Shown in pieces: positions 10,601-29,600 of a stretch of DNA of 64,000 bases. The position numbers and the translations under genes were made by a program. Within the stretch, counting starts at the first letter, position 1. Each line of letters starts with the position of its first letter. The notes below the pieces were generated by a model. That model had not been told where the DNA came from. It did not search any database and worked only from the letters and a program-made list of their open reading frames with translations. The stretch comes from Dimorphilus gyrociliatus (taxonomy: Eukaryota; Animalia; Annelida). Location of the stretch: NCBI GenBank assembly GCA_904063045.1, contig CAJFCJ010000007.1:2673404-2737403 (forward strand), in the 5' to 3' direction.

Positions 10601-11116
10601 CTATAATTATATATTAGTCTTTTTATATTATTAAAAATTTAAATATATATAATAAGTAGATTGCTCTGCCTCTAACGAACCTCTTTAAAGGACTCTAATC
10701 ATTTGCTATAACAGCGAATTAGACGCTTTTTCTTATAATGCAGTTTGATTTTTTTAATTATTAAATCTTTTCAGTCTCAAGAAAATGGCGATTCTAAGCA
10801 TAAGAAAGGTGATATAATGCTAGTTTCGGATCACGTGATTGAAATCGTTGCAAAAATATGTCTTCTCGTTCAGGATACGACGGGAAGGAAGCCGGAGGTT
10901 ATCATTAGTAACCAGTAAGTCGATTTAATTCTTATCCGTTTTCTTTATAGAAAAAACAAAAATCAGTTTATTCTCCCTTCCTTCAACAGATTGCAGGCGG
11001 ACTTTTGCGGAGCATGCGTTGATTTGTCTTTCAAAACGAACGATCCTGAAATGATGTCAGGATATATTAAACTATCTAGGAATAATAACAAGATTGAAGT
11101 GACCGACGGAAAATAA
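4659..11116 (+). CDS. MYO1: Unconventional myosin-I (MYO1A/B-like): motor, IQ motifs, TH1 tail; about 26 exons
   Basis: Starts [14 protein letters not shown]-loop [46 protein letters not shown]-like exons at 9018-9421 and ~9590-9750, TH1 segment [22 protein letters not shown]. Consistent GT-AG introns traced by hand; stop TAA at 11114-11116. Confidence 0.95.
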
Positions 11117-12182
11117 ATGATTATGTAATGATTGAAAAAAAAACCAAAAAAAGACAATAATCCAAAGAGAAATTAGATTTTTTCCTAATATTAACTAAAA
11201 ATTAAACAAACAAACAAATCAAATGAAACAATTGGATACTTGACTTTAGCATCGTGATACAATAAAGAAAAACAAGGAGTGTTCTAAAAAACTAATCGTC
11301 TTTTTCCTGCATTTGTCTTTGTTACGTGAGTTGTGTTAAGTTTTTTATTTGTAGAAACATTAGAGCAGCGTTTTAAATGGTGCTTTTTTTGTCAGTGAAT
11401 TCTCTTCTTTTTTTCTCTTTATCTCTCCTTCTCTTTTATTCTATTTAAATTGTGAAATATTGTTTTTAATATTAATGATAGTTGCAAAATTTGTTTTGCA
11501 AATATAATTGATTTTTACAAGATTAAAAACACAAACAAACAAACGAAATGATTCTTAAATTGATTAATATTATCTTATCAAATCTGTCCCTTTGAGACGA
11601 TTAAAAGGCAACTGTCTTGTAACCTTCATTAGTATGACTTAAGTCAGAGTCTTACACAATGTAAGACATCGTTGCTCTTTTAATCTTTGAAGGTGTACCT
11701 TGACCTTAACGATTTAATCCTCTTTAATCCTTTGATCATTTGTCGGTAATTTTTGTAACAATAAAATATTAGGACACTTCTTTTAAAAGAGGAATTTTTT
11801 TTGAGAAAAGGCGTTTCAAAGAGAATTTAGGCTTTTGGCGGGGGAAGATAACAGACTGACTCAGAAGAGGGAGGTGGAGATCTAAAAACATTGCGACTAT
11901 GTACTCTCATATTCCTAACAATAAACAATTTTGTCAAAGACTGAAAATAAGGATTGATTTACCCTGCTTAAGGAAAAAAATGGAGTATTTATAAAGGTTA
12001 AAAGGGAAATTTATCTTAATAAATAACTTTAAAATTGCCTTCTTGCGCTCGGCGTTTTTTCAAAATGCTTATTAGCCTTATGGCTCTGTTTTCGTTGAAA
12101 GAGCATAAGAGGAATATATAATTTAGAGGTGGCGCTACAATGACTCTTCTGGGCAGAAAAGTAAGTCTTACTAAAATCAACG

Positions 12183-14668: not shown

Positions 14669-17600
14669 CTATTTTGTATCACAAAGTAAAGCCACTCCTC
14701 TTAGGATCCAGTGATCTGGAGTTTTGGAACATTTTAGTTGTACAACCGCAATATAGGTTAAATCTGTTCTTCTCGGCTTTTTATATATCGGACATATGTA
14801 TAGAGGAGTATTCTTAGTTTCGCTTGTTGTTAGCGAATTGATAGCGTAGATATGTATAATTGGCATTTGTTCAAAAAGTACTTTGGCTTTCGCTTCTATT
14901 AATCTATGATTTCTCTTGTCCCATGCTGCACCCTCTAAGAAGAGGCCGTAGACGTATACTCCTTCATCCGGTCCAACTTTGACATCGTCTTTCATCATTT
15001 TCATCACCTATTAGAAGTTAATTGGTATTTTTTGTAATTTTTTCTTGATAAAGTAATCAATACTTACATCATTAGTTAGAACTACGGTATCGAGAGCCCA
15101 GCCTTTGTGGGCGCGGGTAACTTCCTGTCTCATGGCAGTTATAAATCCTTGAGGATTAAAGAATCCTGTCATCCAGAAGCAAGTAGGTCGACCCTCGAAT
15201 ACCCAAGAATGAAATTGATTATTTCTATCAATTAATTCAGTAAACCAAAAGCCGAGAGAAGATGATTCCCAAGAAATTTTCCTCCAGGCATTTGGAATAC
15301 GAGCATCAAACATACAGTCGAGGGCATCTCTCAAAGAGTCAGACATAATGATTGTACCATCGATAGCTAATTTCAGGTCATTTAGTGTCGAACGAACGCA
15401 TGAGATAACCTTTTGCATTCTGTCAACTTCTTGCCTTAAAAAGATGTTCATTGGTTGTAAGCTACCCATCTTTTGCAACCTCTCTTGTACTTCAAATGGT
15501 ATGTAATCGTTCGGTAGTTTATCAAGCATGTCATCAGCTAATCTGTAAACATAACTTTCTCTGGTCTCTCCTCCACCACCAGACGAATCTTTGGGTTGTA
15601 TACTTAAAGTTGTGTCCAGAATAGACTTAACCGTTTTTGTTTGATAGGTAATATCGGCATTTGAGTGAAGACCAAATACCTCGGGACTATCGGTATTTGG
15701 TAAATCATTTATATAGTCATTGATATCGTTAATCTTTTTGCCACTCGGTATAACGTATTCATTATGGAAACTGAAGCTACTGGCAAACATCTCATCTTTA
15801 AACCATGTTTTACAGAAAGTATTTAGTAGACGTTTATCGAAGTCATCTGTAACTCTACCACCGTATTGAATTTCCCCAAACATATAGCGAACGCACGTCC
15901 AATTCACACCTCTCTTCAAGTCGGTATCGTCTAAATGATTTTGAACAAATTGAACTGATGCGTTAAAATCGGCTGTATTAAACTCATAAGGTATATTCCA
16001 GCCTAATGGACCGAATTTTCTTCGTTCCTGAACGACAGAGTGCAAAAACGCCACACCAAAAAGCATAGGCCTCCATTGTGGCATATTAGATATATCTAAG
16101 AAATCTTGCGTAACACCTGCATATGTTCTCTTTAAACCAGCTTTTACACCTTGAGGTGGTTCGTTTGTGAATTTTATAGACATTTGTAAAAATGTTATAG
16201 GGAATTTTGGATGAATTTCGGTCGTTACCCATACTCTGAATTCATCATGAATTTGTTCAGTTTCTAATACTTGATCCATAACCTCAATAACGTATGCCAA
16301 ACTCAAATGGCAATTTTGTAATAGTACCCAACCACCGTTTGTCATACAATTGCTCATTAATCTACGAGCGTGAATTTCTTGACCTTGACCCATAGAAATA
16401 GCTCGACATTCAACTTTGTGCTTTTTAGCCAAAGCCTCTATGCTGCTTGTTGGATCCGAACCCATAGATAGAAGACCAACAAGTGGGGTTCTGCTGACAC
16501 TCTCTTCCCAAACTTTCTCAACATCCAATATTATCCCTTCAGCATACTTTTCGCCAAGAGAATCAGCGACGTACTTTCTGGCCTGAGACAGAGTTCTGTC
16601 CGGACACCAACATCGGACTAGTAATAATCTTCTAAATACATCTAGTGTGTTATTGTAGCCATCTGGTATAGTTTCTTCTTCAGGGGCCTCTTTGTCGAAC
16701 CAAGACTTCCACTGTTTTTCATTACGAGCAACTTGTTCTAAAATACCCGAGAACTGATGTAAATTAGATAATTCAACCAAATTCAACCATGTTGTATCAG
16801 TAATCCACTTAGCAGGTATCGGCTGTACGACCTTTAAATCTAGAGATGCTCCACCCTTGATGAACGTAAGGAATTCTTCTCTTTTAATCTTGCCGCTCTG
16901 TATATCGATTTTCATGGCTAATAAGAGAGTAAACATCATCTTATCGCATTCGTAAAGTCCTCTTACTGTATACTTGAATACTTCAAAAGTCATATATTCA
17001 ATTATATTTTGCATTCTCTTTTGAGTGATAGGTGATTTTTGAGATTTAGCCATAGATTGATCGAAAAGACCTAAGAATTGTTTCAACGATGTCTGATACA
17101 TTACATTTACAGTTGACATTTCAACGATAATGAAATAGAGAATTGAGCCTCTTGTAGCTACTGGTCTAAACTCTTCTCTTGCAGCATTTATCTTTATTTC
17201 TGTATCGGCAGCAATTTGTAATTTTTGGTTGACATCTACCGATGTAACCTTTGTGGTTTTTAATACATCTATCAAATTTTCATCGTCAACTAATGAACCC
17301 TCAGTTGATGTTAATCTGAACAATAAATTATCTTCCAATTCCTTCATTTTCCGTTTATTGGCTGTTACATCTTCCATTAGTTTTACTCTTTCGGATTCTA
17401 ATTCCGCTTTTTCAGTTAGAATTACCCGACCAAGCAACTGATCTTCAAGACCCTTTATTGTAACGGTGAAATCAATAATAGCAGTTCTGGCCGATATCTC
17501 TGGAGTATAGATGGGGTTGGGTAGTTTTGTTGTTATATATAATCTAAATCCGTCCATAACATCAACCTCTTTGTCACCAACTTTTACTTTGAAAGTCGAC

Positions 17601-20600
17601 CCTGATTTTATGTAGTTCTTTTCCAAAACGTTGTCCAAAGCCGGATCCAATTCCTCGCCCACATCTTCAATAAGCAATGGTCTTCCTAAACTTAATGCGT
17701 CTTCTAAATGTTGTCTAAAGTACTTATGATTTAAACTTGTAATTTGTAGCTCATTCTTTGATTCTTTGTTCTTAATCCAAGTAATACCTTGTGTCTGAGG
17801 ATCAATGAGTAAAGGAAATCTTGCTGCTTTTGTAACAATTATACCATTCTGAATAGAAAGTTCATCATTAGGTAAGCCTTCTAAGTTCCATTCGGCTACT
17901 GTTGTAGGGTCGGTTAACATACCAAGAACATTAAGATTTGCAGTATAAGGTATTTTTCTAGTCTTTAATTCTTTTGTCCAATGTTTGTTTAATAAAGATC
18001 TAAAGTCTTGATTAAATGGTCCTGAGTAGGAAAGGAAGGCGGTGCACATTAAAATGTCACCTACTAATCGGCCAATTTGAGCTTTAAATTCTTTACTCTG
18101 TTCTGTCCATCTCTCTCTTTCTCCAGCCAATCCATTGATTAATTCCGAAGCTGCGTTCATTTTCCTCTTACAGCGATCAGCGTCGTCAAGTAGATCTTGC
18201 TTGTCTTTCATAGCTTTATCGTAAACTGCTTGAACTTTATCTAACTCCTTCTGCTTGTCGTCTAATTGAGCCTGAGCTTTGTTCAAATCTCCCATTGCAG
18301 CTTGTAATCTGGCCTCTTGAACAGCAAGATTAGCCTTAAGAGGTAATACTTCTTTGTTGATGTAAAAGAATTTAGCCATAGCTGTAGTCCAAGACAAAAG
18401 TCCAGCAACGTTACCACAAACTCTCTTTGCTTGTTCCATGTTGTAATCTTCCCCAGCGAAATAAGGTTGCAACAGCTCAACAGTTTCATCATTTATAGTA
18501 TCCTTAGGGAAGGAAAGTAAAGCTTGTAAGAAATTTCCTCCTGACATCATTTTTAAACTTTCTGACCAACTAGTCTTAATTCCTCCTTTTTCTTCATCAA
18601 TAGCTGTTGGTTCAACTCTTCTCTGGAAGAGAATGAGTACACAATCCATAATTTTCGTAATTAAATATGGAGGACGTCCAAGTTTTCTGACAGTTGCAAT
18701 ATCGGCTGGTTTAATAGTGTTTAGAGCTGCCTCAGCTTCTTCAAGGGCAGGTCTAGCTGCTTCCAACTTTCCCTCAGCGATAACTTTATCGGCTTCAATA
18801 GAATCTACAATAGCTTGAGCTTTATCCTTAACTTTTTGCACCTGATTTTTAATTTTTTGAGCTGCTTCAGCCTTGACTGTAACTTCTTTCAGAACTTCGC
18901 TTGCTTTCTCTGAAGCAACAGCCAATTCCTTTTCCTTTTCGACTAACTCCTTAGCTAACTCGGCCACTGATTGGGCAGCCTCAACTAATTTAGCCAAACC
19001 TGTATCCATACGGTCAGCCATATCACCTATTTCTTTCTTTTTAGTCGCATAAACTTTCTTATATCCTGCTATAAAGGATAGATATGACTTAGGAGTTACA
19101 TGAGCAGTTCGTCGATATCTTTGAAAATAGTCTAAGCAACTTTGGGCGACTCCGTCATGAACAGTACCCATACTGTGTATAACCTGTTTCTTTATTTCAG
19201 GTGAACATTCCATCGGGAAGACATGAAGGAAGTGATCAGCTACAGCAATAAGAGCTTCCTTTGGCCAACGTTGGAACCAATCCATTGTACATCCTGAAAT
19301 TAGTCCTGGAAATTTCAAGGCTCTCGATCTAAATTTCTCTCCAACTGGTGAGAAGCAAAGTACTACATGCAAATTCTGTCTTGTTCTACTTAAAAAGTAA
19401 TCGTAAAGATTTTCATTTGTAGGTGGTCTTCTAGGATATTCTTTCTTCATAACAGATATAAGTTCTTGCGTAATTTCATCTAACTCATCTCTGGCGAATA
19501 AGTTAGATACTACACCAGAGCTGAGAACGTTATTAAGGTACTCAAGGAAGCCTTCGTCCTTTATTTCTTGATCAGTAAAGATAAAGGTAATACCCTGACC
19601 TTGATGTCCAGCTACTCTGTATAAGTATTTCAAATCTTCCAGCAAATTGGAAACATTATATGAACGTGTCAGAGTTATTTGGAAGGTTTTATAACCAGCG
19701 ATAAACGATGCCAATCTTGTTAAAGACTGTTTTCCAGAGCCACCAACACCTACTAGAAGAGCGTTGCCTCTTGGAGTTCTGATAATTCTTGAAATCTTTA
19801 CTAAATGAATCATTGCATCAGTGAAAAACACCAAATCCATGCCGGATCCTCTAATAGATTCATTATATTGTTGAAGGAACATCTGTAAACGATCTTTCAG
19901 TTGATCAAAATTTTCGACCTGCAAAAAATAAGATAAACAATAACTCTATTCAAAATATCGTTATTTCAATCTCACAGGTTCATACACTTTCGGCATATCG
20001 AAATCAGCATCTTCCGGTTCTTCTCCAGTTGCTTCTGGGGCATCTCTATTTTAGTAAAAAAAACCTAAATAAATATAAATTCTATAACATTTCATTATAT
20101 TAAAGTGCCAATAGTGTAATTAGGATATTTAAAGGTTAATGAAAAAAGCAAGAAGATTACATACATAACAACGATAACAACAATAACTAATAACAGTGAT
20201 AAGGAATAGCAAAACTACTAATATGCTTGAGTTTTTAACGAGTGTAGTTGAGTAAAAGTATCCATCTTGATTGAACTTGAACATTGCTATTATAAAGTGC
20301 CTCTCTGGCATGCCCAAAATGCCAAGATATAACAATTAATCTAAATAATACCTAGATATTTTCCAGAAAGAAATAGGGAAGGGGAATTTTATGCAGGATG
20401 AAATATTATGAAAATCGGTGGTCCGTGTTGATATCTTTTCAGAAATTCTAAAAAATTTAGACTTAAACTAAAAGAAGATATCTTTTTATTTTTGGCTACT
20501 TTTCACTTCCATTTTATCCAATAAGCGATCATGGAAAACGTATAATGAAAACATAAACCGATTCTAAAGTAGAAAATATATCAAATTGAATGAAAAATGT

Positions 20601-23600
20601 CTCCAAAAATGAACATCAGATGTAAAATAGAGATAACAAACAACTAAAAAAAATGATGAAAAATCGAGTATTTAAAAATCAAAAGAAATTGAAGATGTAG
20701 AAAGCTATAATTTTTGTCTAAGATCCTTTTTTTTTGATATTTTCACCTCATAAAATCCATGAAATATCTCGAATTTTCAGTGTATTGACCAAAATCTTCT
20801 CCAATATCTTCAACAACAACCCGCTGAATAGTCTTTTCGAACCACTGAACGTCCGACACTTCAACGCATCTATAGGATTATGGGGTGGCAAGTGCATGGT
20901 TAATGAACAAAGGCAGTTAATTGAGTGCTAATATTATTATTATTATTTAATATAAGAACGCCTCTAAGTTGTCATTTAAGAAATTATAATAAAATAGACA
21001 ATTAGTGACGTTCTATAGGTAAATATCAATTGTAAAATCTATTAGGTGAAGCGTACAGGAACAGTAAACTGGTGCAAATAAGTTTTGGTACATATTTGCT
21101 ATTAGCATGCATTCGGTCACCTATTGAAGTCAACCCAAAGTGATTTAGATTGGTCAACAATTTGACCAATACTTTCGCTTAAATCTTCTGTTGCGACTCT
21201 AGTCGCAGTTTTCGTAAACCAATGATAATCATCCAAAATAGTGAACCTTTGTATTTTGCGCGAAATATTTAAATACATGCATAAGTGATAAAAGAAAATT
21301 TTGTTTTAAATATCTTATATATTGTCTAAAACTATAGCTGTAAATAAAAAATATCTGATCTAAATAGAAAACAATAAACCAGACTAACCTGTCAGCTATG
21401 ACTCGACAGCTCTCGTGTTTCCATAAAGCCAAGAGGGTAGGAACGTCCTTAATAACATCCGAAAGTGTATTAATCATGCCCTGCCATATTCTAGATAAGT
21501 CTCTAAGATTGAAAATATAGTGAAATTTAGCTGGTGTTGGCAACATTTTAATTTTTGTTAGCTGCCACAATCTCCTTGTGACTGGAACTAATTTAGCAAC
21601 CATATCTCTGACTTCCTCACTAAATCCTCTTTCTGCACAATAATGACCACAGCCAATAATACTAAATATTTTATCGATTGATGTATTTGATGGTAGTGTA
21701 CAATTGAAGATATTGAATTGTCTCTTAAGACGCTGGGGTATATCATTTCGACCTCCCCCAGGTTGGATCATAGCAGCCATAAATTGAATATCTACAATAT
21801 TTGTAAAATCACCAGGCTTCTCCAGATTGTAAAATCCTCTCATTTCCATCAGTTGACGTACAATTTCGTTTGCAATTTGATCTCCCCATTCGTTGATTAC
21901 TGGCATATTAATATCATCAACGAAAACTGTCATCTTCTTTCCTGCTGGGGGTCCATAAGTTGAACCCATTCGTTTGTCGACATAGCTTTCAATAGTCCTC
22001 TGGAACATTAATGGTGTTGTGGCTGATGAAAAGTTGAATGACTTTCCTAAATGATTTTCAGGATTATATCTTGCCATGTAACCGTTTATCATGACTGTTT
22101 TAGCTGTTCCCTGTTCACCAATGAGAAGAATTGCTTTTTCTTGTTTGGCTATTGTTTCAATGAGAAAATCTGTTCGGACATTATCGACATTTGGTACTAA
22201 AATGGAGCCGTATTCAGGAGTTGAATCTTTTGGATAGATATATTCTTGAACTCTAGAATTCCAATGAACCCAACTGCCATCTTGTGCCACCAAATAATCA
22301 AATATGGATCCCTCGTTACCTTCACCTTCACCCAAATCTGGCAAATTTAATTTGAACTCCTCTGTCTTTCGAAGCATTTCTTCGAATTTCGCTCTATCAT
22401 CTAACTCAAGGAAGGCACCAATTGACCACATGATTATGAATACATACAACTTTTCATAAAAAGCTTTTGACGGACTTTCACCATGACTGGTTGGAGGAAT
22501 TAATCCTTGTAAGAGATCACAACACTGTCTGATAACAAATGCTTCAAGGACATCCATCTTGAAAACAAAATTTTGAATGGCATATCTATAAATTTGACTG
22601 AAAGAGTCGTCAAATAGCCCCATTATGATGGCTTGTTCTTGAACTGATCTACTATTAAGCCATCCTTCTAAAATTGGTCTCCAATTAAGACCTGAACTTG
22701 ACATGTAAACCATACCGTTTCTAGAAACAGTAGCTGGAGAAGCGTTGTCGATATTATGAGGTTCAAAAATGATTTTACAATTAGCAGCCATTGGAATACG
22801 ATCTCCGTTTGCCAAAGTCAATGTCTTGTTGTCGTCCAATACGGAATTCAAATTTTCGATCCAAATTGCATCTACGGGACCATCAAGAACCAACCATACA
22901 TGCTCACCCTTCTTAGCTCTAAGTGTTCGACGCCAAAGTGTAGAGAAAATACCATCTGTCCAATCGTTTGTAGCAACGTCCAATCTGCCAAACATTTGGG
23001 GAGCTGTAATAGCTTTTGGATTCATTCTCATTTCTCTATGAGGTTCTCCACAATCAGACATAGCTTTCATTAAGATATGAATGCAAGAAGTTTTGCCAGC
23101 ACCGGATGGACCTAGAGTCATCATACCATGTCTAACACGTTGAGTTTCGAAAAGTTGAATCAGTTTCAATACCCAAGCAGGATGATTAACTAATTTAGCA
23201 TTTTCTACTTGCATCCTGATTGCTGACTCTAATTCAGGATAACCAGCTTTATCTAGAGTAATACCAGGGAAGAGATCGTTAATTAGTGATAAGAATAGAG
23301 GTTCATCCTGATCAACTAGTTTTGACAAGTTCATGTCTCGAAGAACTCTCATGACAATTGTTTGCTCAGTATCATTTGGACTTGAACGTTTGACGGCTCC
23401 CAATGTTCTCAAAACAGATAAGATGTTTCTCAAACCAAAATCGTAATGGACCTGTTTTGTGAGTTGTTCTTCGCACAATTTATAAAGAACAAAGAATTTT
23501 CGAGCTAACACAACGTTATCGATAAAACCAACAGAGGCTAGTTTAACTCTTATAATAATCTGTCTATCAGGAACCATCATAGCTACTGTCCTAAAATTGA

Positions 23601-26600
23601 TCTTTAAATTTTCAGGCAACTCCTGACGTCCAGCGTAGCCTGGATTCATTGTTAAGAAGATGCCAAATTCAGGATTCATTGCTACATTATCACCGTCGGT
23701 AAATATGAACTGCTTCTTCCTTTCTTTTTTGCATGTCAGTACGATAGCAATTTGCTGGGCAGCTACAGATAATACGGGTAAATCGATACGGTTAAACTCA
23801 TCGAAACATCCCCAAGATCCAGATTGAGCAAGACCCTTATAGATTCTTCCCAATCCTCGGAAGTCCATCTGATCCGAACAATTGAAAACGACGACATATT
23901 TTCCCAAACATCTTCCCATATCCTTTGTTGTCTCGGTTTTTCCCGTACCAGCTGGACCTGCAGGGGCACCTCCCATTGACATTCCCAAAGCCTGAGAGAG
24001 GGTGATGTAACATCGATCGGTTAAAGGGGTAATTACAAGACGCTCGGTGCACCCTAAAAACTCATTTTGATATTCAAACTCGACATCCGTAATATTGATA
24101 CAGCAGCGATCTGTATCTTCATGGAAATAGAATCTTGTTTGTTTCTGCCATTCAAAATCCAATGGATTCTTTATATTTTTTGATACTAGATCATTAAAGA
24201 TATCCCTTTGATGAACATGAATAGTGATTAAAGTTTCAAATTTGGTTCTTTCTACTTTTGTTAAATCTCTTGTTGTTTGATCGATTAACGTATTCAATAA
24301 GCTTAAGAAATTTTGATTGGTCTGATTCATAATCTTTTTATCAGATCTTGCATTCATTAAAGCATTTGTTGAGTCTCTAGTCCAAATCAACTGAATGCCA
24401 AGAAGACCTACTTGGGCAGGGTAAGATTCTAAAAATTCCAATAATTGAAAACCCGAGTCTGAAATTGTCACTGCAGCAACTCTAATAACGTTGTGCATAG
24501 ATTTGTGTGCCATTTGCATTAGAGACATTAGCCAAATTTCCACGTTACCTTCAGCTTTAACAGGTTTGATGAGATCAATTGTTTCACCTTCTGAAGAATG
24601 AATTGACAAAATACTTTCGTATTGTTTTTCATGGAATTTCACTGATTTTATATTATCAAACACGCTAAGTAAGTGAGCCTGGATAGTATGAGGATCGCTT
24701 GCTTGACCCAAAATTTCCAATAAAGCAGGGTCACTAACAAAGAAGAAACGCGGAAATAATAAACGTTTCTTTTCCAAATAACCTGTCAAAGATTTCTGAC
24801 ACAATTCTAATTGTTCTAATAAGTGAGGTAGTAATTGACTAAGTGTTTCATCTCCCACGCAGCATTGTACCACATTGGGCGTTTCGTGAGCTCTCGTCAT
24901 TATTTTTATCCACGATTTGTCAATATTTGAAAATCTCTTAGCTTCTTTGGGCAATTGTTTTGCAATATCTCCTCCAACGAAGACTGCTTCTAAATATACC
25001 CAAAGATTTTGTACAGTCATCCAATTTTCAATAATTTCCGAAGAATTTGATAGTTTCTGTACCCATGTTTGAATATTCTTTTTGAAAGGGGCATTATATC
25101 TATTAGATAGCAGAGAGGATAAGACCATAAGAGAATCTTCCATTGTCGATACAATTTCCGAAGTAGAATCTCCTCGAAGTAATAATTCACCTCTGCTCTT
25201 AAATGATCCAAAAGTAAAGTCGACGCCATTCCATTCGTTTATAACTTGTTTCAGCTTAGCTTCAATATCCTTTTCTTTGACAGCCGCTATGCAAATGTCC
25301 TCAATATCTTCTTTGTACTTAACAAGTGGAGCTTCCAAAACGTTCTTTAATACAAAATCATCTCTTTCAACATCGAATGTATGGCCAGTTAAATCTGCTA
25401 TTCTCTGCCAATGCCTTGCTTTCATCGCTTTATTAGACATTAATTCAAGTAGAGGAACCATTTCGTTAAAATCGTCAATAGTCTTTCGTAAAACTTCGAA
25501 AGCTGGCCACTCCTTTAAAGCCTTCGGTAGCTTACGACATCTGTTTTGGAATTCTTGAAGTTCTACGTTAATTTTCTCAATGTTAATATCCGTCCATAAA
25601 ATATCATAATAGCCTCGAACTGTATCAATAACGTCGTTAAATAGACCGTAAAGTTTCTGTAACAGATTTAATTCCTTTTTAATCTTTAGCAATTGAGGAT
25701 ATTCAGTTACGGGTAAACCAAACAATTCCTCTCCTCCAGTGTATGTAATAAATTTCCTGTATAGTGTGTCAAATGTATTTTGAAAGATTACTAGGCGATC
25801 CGAAGCTTCTCTGGGTTCAATGCCGGCAACCATCGGACCTCTCTCGTCATAATTATAATAGAATTCATCACAATCCTTAATGAATATTTTAACATTATCG
25901 ATAAGTTCTGTTCTAAAGTTAGGTTGGATTTCTAGCAAGGTTGAGGCAACTTCGACTGTTTGACTTTGTAATTTTTGCCACGAGTATCGTAGAGTATCAC
26001 ACTTTTCTGCTTCTTCTTTAACAACTGGTAGCTCGTGTTTATTAAGCATAGCATACGATTCTTCGATTGGACTGATATCCATGTCGATTCTAATTTCATT
26101 TTCTCGTATTTCCTTCAGGGCTGCCATGGCGAAACGAATGTCATCCAAGTCTTTGATTGGTCTTGATAAACGTTTCACAACATCTTCAATAAATTCAAGA
26201 ATCTCATTCATTTTTGTTCTATATTTATTATTACAATGCTTTCCGTAATGAAGGCACCATTGACGAGTCTCAGCTACTAGACCATCTTTAAGGACCTGGG
26301 TAAATATAGCTATTGGGCCTATTCTAACACTTTCTTGCATAGATAAAATTTCTCTTTCTAATTCTTCATATTTGAAAATCTTCTGCTCAAATTCATTAAG
26401 ATTAGGTGCATCTTTAAGGAAGAGTTGTAAGTCTTCTTCCCTATCGACCTCCCATACATCGCTAAACTTGTGAAATTGTTGTAGAGCTGTTTGAACATCT
26501 TTCTTTGTTGCATTTATCGATGTTGATAAAATCGATATAAGCTTAGAGATGTCCTTGTTTGTGGACACACTCAAGAAGTAATTATTTGGCATTTCTTGAA

Positions 26601-29600
26601 TTTGATTGGGATTCGAAGATTGTTGGTCTTTTCGTCCACCCACTCTTGTTCCAAGATCAGATCTCGAAACCTCCGACGGAGCCATACTGGTAGCACTAGG
26701 TCTTCTTTCTAACGAAGGTTGATCAGCCATAGACGATGACGATCTATCACAAATAGGTTTTTTCTGAAGTTTTTTATTCCATTGAGATACGCCTTTTGAG
26801 ACGCTAACAATGACGTGGGCAGAATTGGTAACAGCGTGTTGAACATCCTCTAAGGATGGGCGCATGACGACATTTGGTATTTCAAGACAAGCATCAGTTC
26901 TAAAGAATGGTTGATGGTCTTTTCGGTCATCTTTAGATGATAGGGAAGAATACATCATTATTCCGCCAGAAGAAATTCGTTTCCTAATTGATTCTAAAGT
27001 ATTTCGTGTAACTTTGAGTATAGCTTGAAGATTTTTCGTATTAAAATGATTTAAAAGTTCTTGAGCTTTTTCCTTCAGATTTTCTTGTTGAGCAGCTTTC
27101 CTTCTGGCTACTTGTTCAGCTCTATTACTCTTTGTACTTTGAGGTCTGGACATTTTGGAAGCAGCTGTTCTTCTTGAAGGTGAAGCAGAAGCTCGACCAT
27201 CTTCACTATTCTCCTCATTCTCATCCTCTTCACCCTCTAAGTCATTTTCCTCCTCTGCTGCTGATTGCCACAACATGGCTATTAATTCATTTACAGCATC
27301 CTCTACGTTAACGCTCTTAGATTGCAATTGTAAAGCTCCTTTACAACATAATTGAGAAGTTCTCTCAACGAATTCATCAACCTTCCAAGCCTCGTCTTCG
27401 GGTAATTCGCAAAGTGAGATAGTAGACATTTCTGCGAGAACGGCTTCTATTCTAAATTCAACAATGTCGTTTGCTCTGTTCATCATCAATTCCAAATCAG
27501 CAAGCCTTTCGTAAACAAGCTATTCAATAAAAAACAATTACATTAAAAAACAAATGAGTTAGTCTCGTTTTATATTGAAATAAATATAAACTAATATTTA
27601 CCCGGATATAATCGTCAACTTTGGTTGTTGTCCAGGTATATTCAATTATTGCTGGTTCAATAGCATCGTTTACCTTTTGAATGTGAGGTTGCATCAATTC
27701 TTTAAAAGCTTCTGGTATTTTAGATTTTACTCTTCTAATTTCACCGATCATTAGCTAATTTAAGAATAAAAAGAGGAAATCAATTAGATAAATGTTAATA
27801 TTCAGTCTAAAATTATATTACTGTTAATTCATTATAGGTTTTCTTGAAATAATCATGTTTAGCTCTTAGGGCTTGAGCCGCTTGCGGTATTTCCAATTGT
27901 AGTCTTATCATACTCTCGGTTTCTCTTATTAGAGTGAGAATTTGTGGATCAAAGTTAACAAAGAGATCATCTGGATTTTCTGGGTGCCTTACTAAAAGCG
28001 ATGCTTGTAAACCGGATTTTGCAGCCTCAACTTGACGAATCCATAATCTATGAAACATCATTTCGAATTCTAACAAGACTTTAGCTAATTTATTGTAGTT
28101 TCTGATTATCTTTTTGGCTTCTGAAGTTTGAAGAATAGATGGATGACGTTGAAAGGCGTCCATTGGCTCTTGGATACGTCTATATAATTGTCTAGCCCAT
28201 GTTATTTTTCCGGCAATTGGAGGTAGATCTCTCGGAATGGGCGGCTCAGTTTTATTTTTGCCGTAGATTCTGGTTATAATATCAACATCTCTTGCGTAGT
28301 GAGATAATATTCTTTGATATTTATCTTCAATCCCTAAATTCGGTAGACCTAAACATTCGAATTTTTTCAATAGACTTAATGCAAATTGAGTATTATGAAT
28401 TCTTTCGAATCTTTGATCCATAAAATTTACAATAGCCGAGTGTAAATCGCTAATCTGTCTTTTAAAATCTTCGAAATCATTATAAAACTCTTGACGCCTA
28501 TGATCTAAGAAATCGTACGATTTCTTTTTCATACTTATAACGATCACTTGAAATTTATTGCTCATTAGTTCCATCCCTTCGATTTTCGAATCGGCTAGAT
28601 GCGAATATAGTCCCATTGTTTCAAACATTTCAATTATCATCTTTAACCTTTTGGTAAATGTATCCATTTTACCAAAAATATAGACACCAGAAAAATCAAA
28701 TTGTCTTTCCTCTGGTACTTCCTCTAACTTTTCCTTAGTCTTGTGGAAATGATTTTGATAGCTATCATACAATTTAATACAATCTTTCAATTTCTTTAAA
28801 ACTGAGTCTGTTTCCTGTGTCCATATTGTTTCGATTCCACCGTCTGTTATATAAGCTTTACAAGCAGTAATCATTTGATTAGTTATCTTAACAAATAGTG
28901 AAGTCATATGTTTAGAGGTATTATAAAATCTGGAAATGCTATGTATCATTCGAATCGCATTAATAAGACCCGGTATTGCATCTAACATTCCGACTGGATC
29001 ACTGTTGTATAGTGGATCGCAAAATTTTTCGAGAGTATATAAATATTTAACATTATCCTTTGCCTCATTTGCATAGTCAGTAATTCTTCTATCTAAATCT
29101 TGCCATTGTCTAATAGTTTTGCTTTTAGCGGCCGCTAGTATGCCAAGAATTTTCTTCACTTCATTACCCTTCAATTGATCTAGTATAAAGTTAAATTTGG
29201 ACATTCTTTTCTTCCAATAATCTAACTCTGCTCTTGGTCCTATATTATCCGCTTCCCTTCTCATTTGTTCACTTTCAGCTAGGACTTGTTCTATCTGCTT
29301 CATCCAGACTGCCATACATTCTTCAACAGCCTTTAAAGTTTCAGTGTTGTTTGCAGCGTTGTTATAATCGGATGGACCTCTAATATTCTTCAGTAAGTCT
29401 TCTCTTCCGCACTCTTTTAATTGCACTTTATCTTCAAGTGTATCTTGAGCGCCATCCAGTACGGACACAAAACCATCCAATGTATTTAAAAAATCATTTC
29501 TCTTTTGAAATTGAGTATCCAGATGCCCCCAACCTTTATTCATTTTCCTTAACGAAGGTATATAAACAGAAGTGAGAAGTGATTGTATCGCACTTAATAA

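What the first reader, a model, noticed from the sequence alone, without database searches (positions are those of the whole stretch)
20747..21246. Duplicated, probably mutually exclusive exons in the motor ring of an outer-arm dynein
Seen: two tandem exons of 126 and 123 nt, both phase 2/2 with canonical splice sites. They encode homologous peptides ([32 protein letters not shown] versus [32 protein letters not shown]). Each alone fills the gap between ..[10 protein letters not shown] and DAPEATGE.., which as I recall is a single segment in vertebrate DNAH5 (FTVSSDVTWFDK..YFVDFLR). Including both would duplicate a structural element. The segment lies at the end of AAA3, leading into AAA4. Inference: one gene makes two motor variants with a swapped AAA3-AAA4 element, perhaps for different cilia or sperm. 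I know of no description of this for axonemal dyneins. The 251-nt spacer is too long for steric exclusion, so an RNA-pairing or factor-based switch is expected.
Basis: partly seen in the sequence, partly recalled or inferred. Interest (0 to 1): 0.8.

Follow-up and report, generated by a model that had tools for sequence, protein, structure and literature searches.

The report
Swappable exon pair in ciliary dynein
One gene for the main outer-arm motor of cilia (a DNAH5-type dynein) holds two alternative copies of a 41-residue piece at the end of its third ATPase module; RNA uses one copy or the other, and the same pair occurs in annelids, molluscs, a bryozoan, a flatworm and a rotifer.

Summary
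On the minus strand, exons A (21246-21121, 126 nt) and B (20869-20747, 123 nt) are homologous, both in phase 2/2, with AG/GT splice sites. They lie between two giant exons of a DNAH5 orthologue.

RNA contigs of one run join each exon directly to both flanking exons. They show no A-B joint and no skip-both joint. Form B is about three times as deep as form A.

A relative (L003) has saturated synonymous divergence, yet keeps both exons under purifying selection, along with blocks of the intron between them.

New here: the pair is not a local oddity.
- Tandem pairs with identical phase lie in the genomic DNA of a second annelid-like contig, a rotifer, Lottia and Bugula.
- Equal-length RefSeq isoforms in Physella, Haliotis, Ostrea and scallops swap exactly this segment.
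- Nematostella, a sea cucumber and Priapulus have one copy.

The segment is the last helix of the AAA3 lid plus the run-in to AAA4 (human DNAH5 2834-2875).

The switch mechanism is not settled. Steric, U12 and NMD models fail, and no conserved RNA pairing was found. Conserved (U)GCAUG motifs suggest a factor-driven switch.

The scan has noted similar exon pairs in other dynein genes of this genome. I found no paper that describes this pair.

The parts
21389..27495 (-). Giant upstream exon of the DNAH5 orthologue (open frame; the 5' limit of the exon was not determined). It ends ..[11 protein letters not shown] plus 2 bases of an Arg codon.
   Evidence: ORF list. Pfam DHC_N2, AAA_6, AAA_5, Dynein_AAA_lid, AAA_7 and AAA_lid_1 (profile 8-67). 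846 bits to human DNAH5 over the last 500 aa.
21247..21388 (-). Intron 1 (142 nt, GT..AG). It holds a TGCATG at 21281-21276 that is kept in the relative L003, and a purine-rich, weak tract before exon A.
   Evidence: (joint 21389>21246)
21121..21246 (-). Alternative exon A (126 nt, phase 2/2), the minor form.
   Evidence: Joints to 21389 (depth 84) and to 20045 (depth 80) in X2. dN 0.12, dS 0.67 against L003.
20870..21120 (-). Intron 2 (251 nt) between the alternative exons. It has three colinear exact blocks shared with L003: 21113-21102 (contains TGCATGC, 8 nt after the exon A donor), 21057-21046, and 20904-20889 (branch-site-like TTAAC plus the tract before exon B).
   Evidence: 16 shared 9-mers against 0.86 in shuffles, maximum 7
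20747..20869 (-). Alternative exon B (123 nt, phase 2/2), the major form.
   Evidence: Joints to 21389 (depth 215) and to 20045 (depth 281) in X2, and both joints in X1. dN 0.086 with dS saturated against L003.
20046..20745 (-). Intron 3 (about 700 nt), mostly unconserved. A GCATGCC at 20313-20307 and an A-rich block just after the exon B donor are kept in L003.
19976..20045 (-). Constitutive 70-nt exon: an acidic linker ([23 protein letters not shown]) between AAA3 and AAA4.
   Evidence: (joint 19976>19918)
15011..19918 (-). Giant downstream exon (open frame; its 3' end was not determined): AAA4, stalk/MTBD, AAA5, AAA6 and the C-terminal domain.

Best explanation
Exons A and B are a tandemly duplicated, mutually exclusive exon pair in the DNAH5-type (gamma-type) outer-arm dynein heavy chain of a small spiralian, by similarity an annelid. 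Each mRNA takes exactly one of them. The gene therefore makes two motors that differ only in the last helix of the AAA3 lid and the stretch leading to the AAA3-AAA4 linker (equivalent to human DNAH5 2834-2875). The pair is old. The same two-exon arrangement, with the same phase, exists across Spiralia, and exon B is nearest to the second-type exon of scallops. Both versions have therefore been kept by selection for a very long time.

What is shown: the anatomy, alternative use in RNA, selection on both copies, and the wide distribution.

What is inferred about the switch (about 35% for this model):
- B is the default exon. It has the better pyrimidine tract and about 3/4 of the transcripts.
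- A has a weak purine-rich acceptor. It is switched on in some cells by a factor bound to conserved intronic elements, most likely an Rbfox-type protein at the conserved UGCAUG 8 nt downstream of A.
- The same intronic complex sits upstream of B and would hold B back.

What is inferred about function: the swap tunes either AAA3 nucleotide gating and AAA3-AAA4 coupling, or a surface contact of the motor ring, for different kinds of cilia or flagella.
For: Anatomy.

Gene identity: human DNAH5 846 bits; DNAH9 267 bits; Pfam order.

RNA. X2 contigs carry the joints 21389>21246 (depth 84), 21121>20045 (80), 21389>20869 (215) and 20747>20045 (281). X1, an independent coral metatranscriptome about 1% diverged, carries the B form in one 537-nt contig. 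Neither run has an A-B or a skip-both joint.

Selection. Flanking exons have saturated dS, yet A and B each differ at only 7 residues from L003, with splice sites intact.

Conserved intron 2 blocks.

Distribution:
- Genomic tandem pairs of 123-nt phase-2/2 exons in L004, rotifer L006, Lottia L007 and Bugula L009, where the first copy is unannotated.
- Tandem double models in Biomphalaria, Macrostomum, Didymodactylos, Ylistrum and Elysia.
- Equal-length isoform pairs that swap the segment in Physella, three Haliotis species, Ostrea, Argopecten and Mizuhopecten.
- A single copy in Nematostella, Apostichopus and Priapulus, and in the two other DNAH5-family genes of this genome.

Tree: window B plus L003 B group with scallop X2 at 97/91.

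Motif: GCATG occurs 8 times in introns 1 and 2 of six loci against 1.24 expected. All three window copies are kept in L003.
Against: The RNA evidence is from assembled contigs, which drop rare variants. Low-level double inclusion or double skipping, both in frame, cannot be excluded.

Only one run shows form A. Its library type is not on record; it is judged to be RNA from its spliced joints and the exon/intron depth ratio.

The AU test does not reject a separate duplication within the window's lineage (p 0.17; p 0.24). A single ancient origin is therefore favoured but not proven.

The GCAUG motif was noticed after looking at the sequence. It is absent from L004, and its position in the intron varies between phyla. 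A search for the Fox-1_C domain in this genome found nothing (a weak test).

Nothing here shows what enforces exclusivity, where each form is expressed, or that the two proteins behave differently.
Confidence: 0.85

Rival explanations
1. Exclusivity and choice are set by competing RNA secondary structures (docking site and selector sequences, as in insect Dscam, 14-3-3 zeta and Mhc), not by a protein factor.
For: The exon lengths rule out NMD and the 251-nt intron rules out steric hindrance, so some active mechanism is needed. Intron 2 holds conserved non-coding blocks. By eye, a 5-6 bp pairing is possible between the exon A donor (GGUGAC) and the conserved block GUCACU/GUUACU about 110 nt downstream; it survives a C-to-U change in L003 as G-U.
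Against: The inverted-repeat search of the whole intron region in the window and in L003 gave only A/T-rich chance matches. None joined conserved blocks at matching places in both species.
Confidence: 0.2
2. The two exons are independent cassette exons, or one is noise. Only one form (B) matters, and A is a tolerated minor product without a function of its own.
For: B is about three times as abundant in X2 and is the only form seen in X1. Exon A has a weak acceptor tract. Exon A finds no dynein in a single-sequence PDB search, whereas B does.
Against: A is joined cleanly to both flanks at about a quarter of transcripts. Its dN/dS against L003 is 0.18, with unusually low dS. First-type exons are kept with intact splice sites in Lottia, Bugula, a rotifer and others, and are used in RefSeq isoforms of five mollusc genera.
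Confidence: 0.07
3. The pairs in different phyla arose by repeated independent duplication of the same exon, not from one ancestral spiralian pair.
For: The AU tests do not reject keeping the window's A and B together (p 0.17-0.24) or the gastropod copies together (p 0.33). The copies in L004 and in the rotifer do not sort cleanly by position. Only 40 columns are available.
Against: The best tree is 12.6-14.8 log-likelihood units better than the constrained ones. Window B groups with scallop X2 at 97/91, and a second-type clade has 94/85 support. Phase, the 123-nt length and tandem order are the same in every phylum. The three non-spiralian outgroups checked have one copy.
Confidence: 0.25

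Closest known systems
Mutually exclusive exon in the cytoplasmic dynein heavy chain (DHC1) of Schistosoma mansoni (WebScipio test case, PMC3228551); general remark that some DHC genes have alternative motor-domain exons (PMC5100056)
   Same: Tandem, homologous, equal-length exons with split codons inside a dynein motor domain. They are judged exclusive because all other dyneins have one copy of the segment.
   Different: That case is a different dynein class (cytoplasmic) and a different exon. It was predicted from sequence only. Here the gene is an axonemal outer-arm heavy chain, the swapped part is the AAA3 lid end, RNA junctions support the splicing, and the pair is traced across phyla.
Muscle myosin heavy chain (Mhc) exon clusters of insects (my own knowledge; also named as a test case in PMC3228551)
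   Same: One motor gene yields several motors by swapping short structural elements of the ATPase core through mutually exclusive tandem exons. The variants are kept over long evolutionary spans.
   Different: It is a different motor superfamily, with several clusters per gene. For Mhc the tissue specificity and kinetic effects are shown by experiment; here they are not.
Vertebrate DNAH5 / DNAH8 paralogues (two genes; PDB 8j07 chain n0 and the 4730-residue chain 9fqr_I3)
   Same: Both give two versions of the same outer-arm heavy chain. The window's segment aligns to DNAH5 2834-2875 and to 2940-2979 of the second chain.
   Different: Vertebrates diversified by duplicating the whole gene. The spiralian gene diversifies 41 residues by splicing. 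This genome also has two further DNAH5-family genes with a single segment.
Fox-1/ASD-1 (Rbfox) control of the mutually exclusive exons 5A/5B of C. elegans egl-15 through intronic UGCAUG (my own knowledge, not checked in a paper here)
   Same: A two-exon exclusive pair with UGCAUG in the flanking or intervening introns. A factor bound between the exons can favour one and repress the other.
   Different: Here only the motif and its conservation are shown. No binding, no factor and no tissue pattern were tested.

Membership tests
DNAH5/DNAH8-type (gamma-type) outer-arm axonemal dynein heavy chain | Closest to DNAH5 and clearly better than to other heavy-chain classes | tested here: met
   human DNAH5 846 bits over 500 aa, Chlamydomonas gamma 448, DNAH10 about 310, DNAH9 267; the named best hits are all 'dynein heavy chain 5/8'.
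DNAH5/DNAH8-type (gamma-type) outer-arm axonemal dynein heavy chain | Dynein motor domain order (linker, AAA1-AAA4, stalk, AAA5, AAA6, C-terminal domain) | tested here: met
   DHC_N2, AAA_6, AAA_5, Dynein_AAA_lid, AAA_7 and AAA_lid_1 in the upstream exon; AAA_8, MT, AAA_9, Dynein_heavy, AAA_lid_11 and Dynein_C in the downstream exon.
DNAH5/DNAH8-type (gamma-type) outer-arm axonemal dynein heavy chain | Sits in the outer dynein arm of the axoneme | not testable with these tools
   Inferred from orthology only.
Mutually exclusive exon cluster born of tandem exon duplication | Neighbouring exons are homologous, of like length and same phase, with own splice sites | tested here: met
   126 and 123 nt, phase 2/2, AG/GT, 38% identity. 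The same holds in five other loci.
Mutually exclusive exon cluster born of tandem exon duplication | Transcripts contain one member, never both or none | tested here: met
   four single-inclusion joints and no A-B or skip-both joint. Limit: contigs can miss rare forms. Equal-length isoform pairs in molluscs.
Mutually exclusive exon cluster born of tandem exon duplication | Both members kept by selection | tested here: met
   (dN/dS 0.18 for A and under 0.1 for B, against saturated dS). (kept across phyla).
Steric-hindrance exclusive pair (alpha-tropomyosin type) | The intron between the exons, or the donor-to-branch-point distance, is too short to splice | tested here: not met
   Intron 2 is 251 nt here and 101-391 nt in the other loci. 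AG dinucleotides follow the distal branch-like sites, so a far-upstream branch point is unlikely.
U2/U12 spliceosome-incompatibility pair | One intron has U12-type splice sites | tested here: not met
   All donors are GTTAGT, GTGACC or GTGAAA, and all acceptors are AG. There is no ATATCC or GTATCC donor.
Exclusivity enforced by frame shift and NMD | Exon lengths are not multiples of three | tested here: not met
   126 and 123 nt: both-in and both-out stay in frame.
Docking-site/selector RNA pairing (Dscam type) | Conserved complementary intronic elements that compete | tested here: inconclusive
   no conserved inverted repeats between the window and L003, only A/T-rich chance pairs. The energy scan timed out. 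Only two close species were available.
Rbfox-regulated alternative exon | Conserved intronic (U)GCAUG near the regulated exon | tested here: met
   GCATG at 21280-21276, 21110-21106 and 20313-20309, all kept in L003. 8 seen against 1.24 expected in introns 1 and 2 of six loci. None in L004.
Rbfox-regulated alternative exon | An Rbfox protein binds and changes the exon ratio | not testable with these tools
   The Fox-1_C Pfam search of the genome was blank. That domain is short and split by introns, so the blank says little.

The most novel reading that the evidence does not exclude
A single exon duplication in an early spiralian gave the DNAH5-type outer-arm dynein a two-state AAA3-lid switch, and annelids, molluscs, bryozoans, flatworms and rotifers have all kept it since. 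The two forms would equip different axonemes (for example sperm flagella versus locomotory or feeding ciliary bands) with motors that differ in AAA3 gating. This would parallel at exon level the vertebrate DNAH5/DNAH8 split. It would also offer a natural pair of sequences for studying what the AAA3 lid does in an axonemal dynein.
Probability: 0.3. Interest if true: 0.75.

Novelty: new member of a known kind. Interest (0 to 1): 0.58.

Why it matters
Outer-arm dynein sets ciliary beat frequency, and AAA3 is the regulatory ATP site of the dynein ring. Selection has kept two alternative 41-residue versions of the AAA3 lid end across several phyla. That marks this small element as functionally tunable.

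The pair gives matched natural variants for motility assays and structural work. It also shows that ciliary motor diversity in spiralians comes partly from splicing, not only from gene number, so counts of dynein genes understate it.

In practice, several public gene models are affected. Biomphalaria, Macrostomum, Didymodactylos, Ylistrum and Elysia fuse both exons into one protein. Lottia and Bugula omit one.

Tried and rejected
- Single-exon searches of the PDB were nearly blank. Exon A found no dynein, and exon B found only a weak hit. A profile of 15 copies then placed the segment.
- Pfam on the bare 40-41-residue exons found nothing. The placement came from the flanks and from full-length mollusc isoforms.
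- Owenia (P0002) and Physella (P0160) had no genomic record, and the Aplysia gene was too long to fetch. These three could not be checked at DNA level.
- The other rotifer DNAH5-family gene (L005) has one copy, split by a different intron.
- The RNA duplex scan with shuffles timed out. The inverted-repeat search gave only A/T-rich chance pairs.
- Pairing between the palindromic GCATG copies was considered by eye. It reaches only 5-7 bp and is not kept in L003, so I dropped it.
- A distant branch point close to the exon A donor (tropomyosin model) was considered and dropped, because AG dinucleotides follow the candidate sites.
- The Fox-1_C domain search of the genome was blank.
- The AU tests did not settle single versus repeated origin.
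- Literature searches found no paper on this exon pair.
- P0005 shows an exact internal repeat that looks like an assembly artefact, not an exon pair.
- No structure was predicted, because the tools return no coordinates for contact analysis.
- Complex prediction and the large representative search were not needed.
Full report
**1. What is in the window**

The gene lies on the minus strand. A 6.1-kb open exon ends at 21389 with ..[11 protein letters not shown] and two bases of an Arg codon. Then follow, in order:
- intron 1, 142 nt;
- exon A, 21246-21121, 126 nt;
- intron 2, 251 nt;
- exon B, 20869-20747, 123 nt;
- intron 3, about 700 nt;
- a 70-nt exon, 20045-19976, that encodes an acidic linker;
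- a 57-nt intron;
- a second giant open exon from 19918 downward.

Every intron is GT..AG. Exons A and B both begin with the third base of an Arg codon and end with the first two bases of the next Arg codon. Their peptides align over 41 columns at 38% identity with a single one-residue gap.

**2. Which gene, and which part of the protein**

The last 500 residues of the upstream exon score 846 bits against human DNAH5 (PDB 8j07 chain n0). The Chlamydomonas outer-arm gamma chain scores 448 bits, and DNAH9 or DNAH17 about 265. The Pfam order is that of a dynein motor.

AAA_7 (the AAA3 large domain) and AAA_lid_1 lie at the end of the upstream exon. The lid profile is cut at position 67 of 100. 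AAA_8 (AAA4) begins 27 residues into the last exon. In full-length mollusc isoforms the lid profile runs on about 17 residues into the swapped segment.

A profile of 15 copies of the segment places it at human DNAH5 2834-2875. It also matches 2940-2979 of the 4730-residue chain 9fqr_I3 and 2686-2723 of the Chlamydomonas gamma chain.

The same genome has two more DNAH5-family genes. In both, the segment is single and lies inside a large exon.

**3. RNA**

One search for runs and one lay of reads were allowed.

Run X2 (organism coded, 2017, library type not on record) behaves as RNA. Its contigs lie at depth 160-790 on exons and about 27 on introns, and they carry spliced joints. It shows:
- 21389>21246, depth 84;
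- 21121>20045, depth 80;
- 21389>20869, depth 215;
- 20747>20045, depth 281.

It shows no 21121>20869 joint and no 21389>20045 joint.

Run X1, a coral metatranscriptome about 1% diverged from the window, has one 537-nt contig that joins the upstream exon, exon B and the 70-nt exon.

Both forms therefore exist, each with only one of the two exons, and B is about three times as deep as A. The limit of this evidence: contigs drop rare variants, so a few per cent of double inclusion or double skipping would go unseen. Both of those products would stay in frame.

**4. Selection**

The word search found a 2038-residue protein that is 91% identical to the query, on a 17.5-kb Logan contig (L003). That contig has the same layout, with exon A' at 10706-10831 and exon B' at 11084-11206.

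Between the two species the synonymous sites of the flanking exons are saturated. Even so, A and B each differ at only 7 residues. For A, dN is 0.12 and dS 0.67. For B, dN is 0.086 and dS is saturated. All splice sites are kept. Neither exon is a decaying copy. The low dS of exon A hints at extra constraint on its RNA.

Intron 2 holds three colinear exact blocks of 12, 12 and 16 nt. It shares 16 9-mers with L003, against 0.86 in shuffles. Introns 1 and 3 are at chance level by that measure.

**5. The pair is widespread in Spiralia**

- A metagenome contig (L004) whose dynein is closest to that of the annelid Owenia has two tandem 123-nt exons in the same phase, with introns of 63, 101 and 88 nt.
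- Among about 230 DNAH5/8 proteins, the distance across this region is constant, except in models that are 41 residues longer and hold two copies in tandem. These are Biomphalaria, Macrostomum and two Didymodactylos genes, and later Ylistrum and Elysia crispata.
- Genomic DNA shows two 123-nt phase-2/2 exons with AG/GT in the rotifer (L006), in Lottia (L007) and in Bugula (L009). In the last two, the first copy is missing from the public protein.
- RefSeq isoforms of equal length that differ in exactly this segment exist for Physella, three Haliotis species, Ostrea edulis, Argopecten and Mizuhopecten.
- Only one copy is present in the fetched loci of Nematostella, the sea cucumber Apostichopus and Priapulus. 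The Priapulus locus has assembly gaps, none close to the exon.
- The intron after the segment is shared with cnidarians and echinoderms. The intron before it is shared with Priapulus.

In a tree of the 40-column segment, window B and L003 B group with the scallop X2 exon (97/91), inside a second-type clade (94/85). Window A groups with the only annotated Owenia copy (94/80).

The best tree beats the tree that forces A and B together by 14.8 log-likelihood units, but the AU test gives p = 0.17. One ancient duplication is the better reading, but it is not proven. For the second tree I left out the rows for human DNAH5, L004 copy 1, Liolophura and Pecten, because they were long-branched or redundant.

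**6. How the choice could work**

Four textbook ways to enforce exclusivity can be judged from the sequence.
- Steric hindrance fails. The intron is 251 nt here and 101-391 nt elsewhere.
- U2/U12 incompatibility fails. All sites are U2-type GT-AG.
- Frame shift with NMD fails. Both lengths are multiples of three.
- Competing RNA pairing found no support. Inverted repeats in the window and in L003 are A/T-rich chance matches that do not coincide.

What the sequence does show:
- Exon A has a purine-rich, weak acceptor tract, kept in L003. Exon B has a normal one.
- Three GCATG elements are conserved: 30 nt before exon A, 11 nt after it (8 nt for the TGCATG), and in intron 3.
- Over six loci, introns 1 and 2 hold 8 GCATG against 1.24 expected. 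Four of five independent lineages have at least one in intron 2.

(U)GCAUG is the binding site of Rbfox proteins. By established knowledge these activate an exon from downstream and repress it from upstream.

My working model: B is the default exon. A is turned on, and B held back, by a factor bound in intron 2. I give this about 35%. The motif was noticed after looking at the sequence, it is missing in L004, and no factor was tested.

**7. What is known**

- A mutually exclusive exon in a cytoplasmic dynein heavy chain of Schistosoma mansoni was a test case for WebScipio (PMC3228551).
- Kollmar's survey of dynein heavy chains says only that some genes have alternative splice forms in the motor domain, and it did not analyse them (PMC5100056).
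- The survey of human mutually exclusive exons does not mention dynein genes in its text.
- Five searches found no paper on this pair.
- The mollusc RefSeq isoforms show that annotation pipelines have already captured the swap, without comment.
- Earlier notes of this scan report exon pairs in cytoplasmic dynein-1, DNAH6 and DNAH12 of the same genome, and one note names the animal as Dimorphilus gyrociliatus. I did not test those notes. A small annelid with a 78-Mb genome fits what I saw.

**9. Verdict**

The feature is a real, selected, mutually exclusive exon pair in an outer-arm dynein. It is an old spiralian trait rather than a curiosity of one worm. It is a new, apparently undescribed member of a known kind. 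Its biological role and its switch remain open.

Noticed in passing
window 15011-27495 (minus strand); L003 4431-16990; L004 1719-12485: The dynein gene is almost free of introns. It has two exons of about 6.1 and 4.9 kb, and the few introns that remain cluster around the alternative exon pair. The same holds in both relatives. Introns next to alternative exons seem to have been spared by intron loss.
   Followed up: partly
window 21121-21246 against L003 10706-10831: Exon A has much lower synonymous divergence (dS 0.67) than the flanking exons and exon B, where dS is saturated. This hints at splicing signals or RNA structure inside exon A.
   Followed up: no
G000:C2:2213313-2213432 (L013) and G000:C9:1098125-1098244 (L014): Two further DNAH5-family heavy-chain genes lie in the same genome. 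In both, the equivalent segment is single and lies inside a large exon.
   Followed up: partly
run X1 on window 19000-22500: A coral metatranscriptome holds transcripts about 99% identical to this gene. This animal, or a very close relative, therefore lived in that coral sample.
   Followed up: no
L007 24520-24642 (Lottia); L009 31038-31160 (Bugula); proteins P0153, P0164, P0157, P0168, P0261, P0276: Public gene models mishandle the pair. Some omit one exon (Lottia, Bugula). Others fuse both exons into a protein 41 residues too long (Biomphalaria, Macrostomum, Didymodactylos, Ylistrum, Elysia crispata).
   Followed up: yes
protein P0005 (metaclust), residues about 1304-1464: An exact repeat of about 70 residues spans the segment and the linker. 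It looks like an assembly or model artefact, not a diverged exon pair.
   Followed up: no
L006 22556-22828 (rotifer intron between the pair): This 273-nt intron holds two GCATG motifs, and a TGTATACTTCAC that resembles the conserved window block TGTACGCTTCAC. By a rough estimate the resemblance may be chance.
   Followed up: partly
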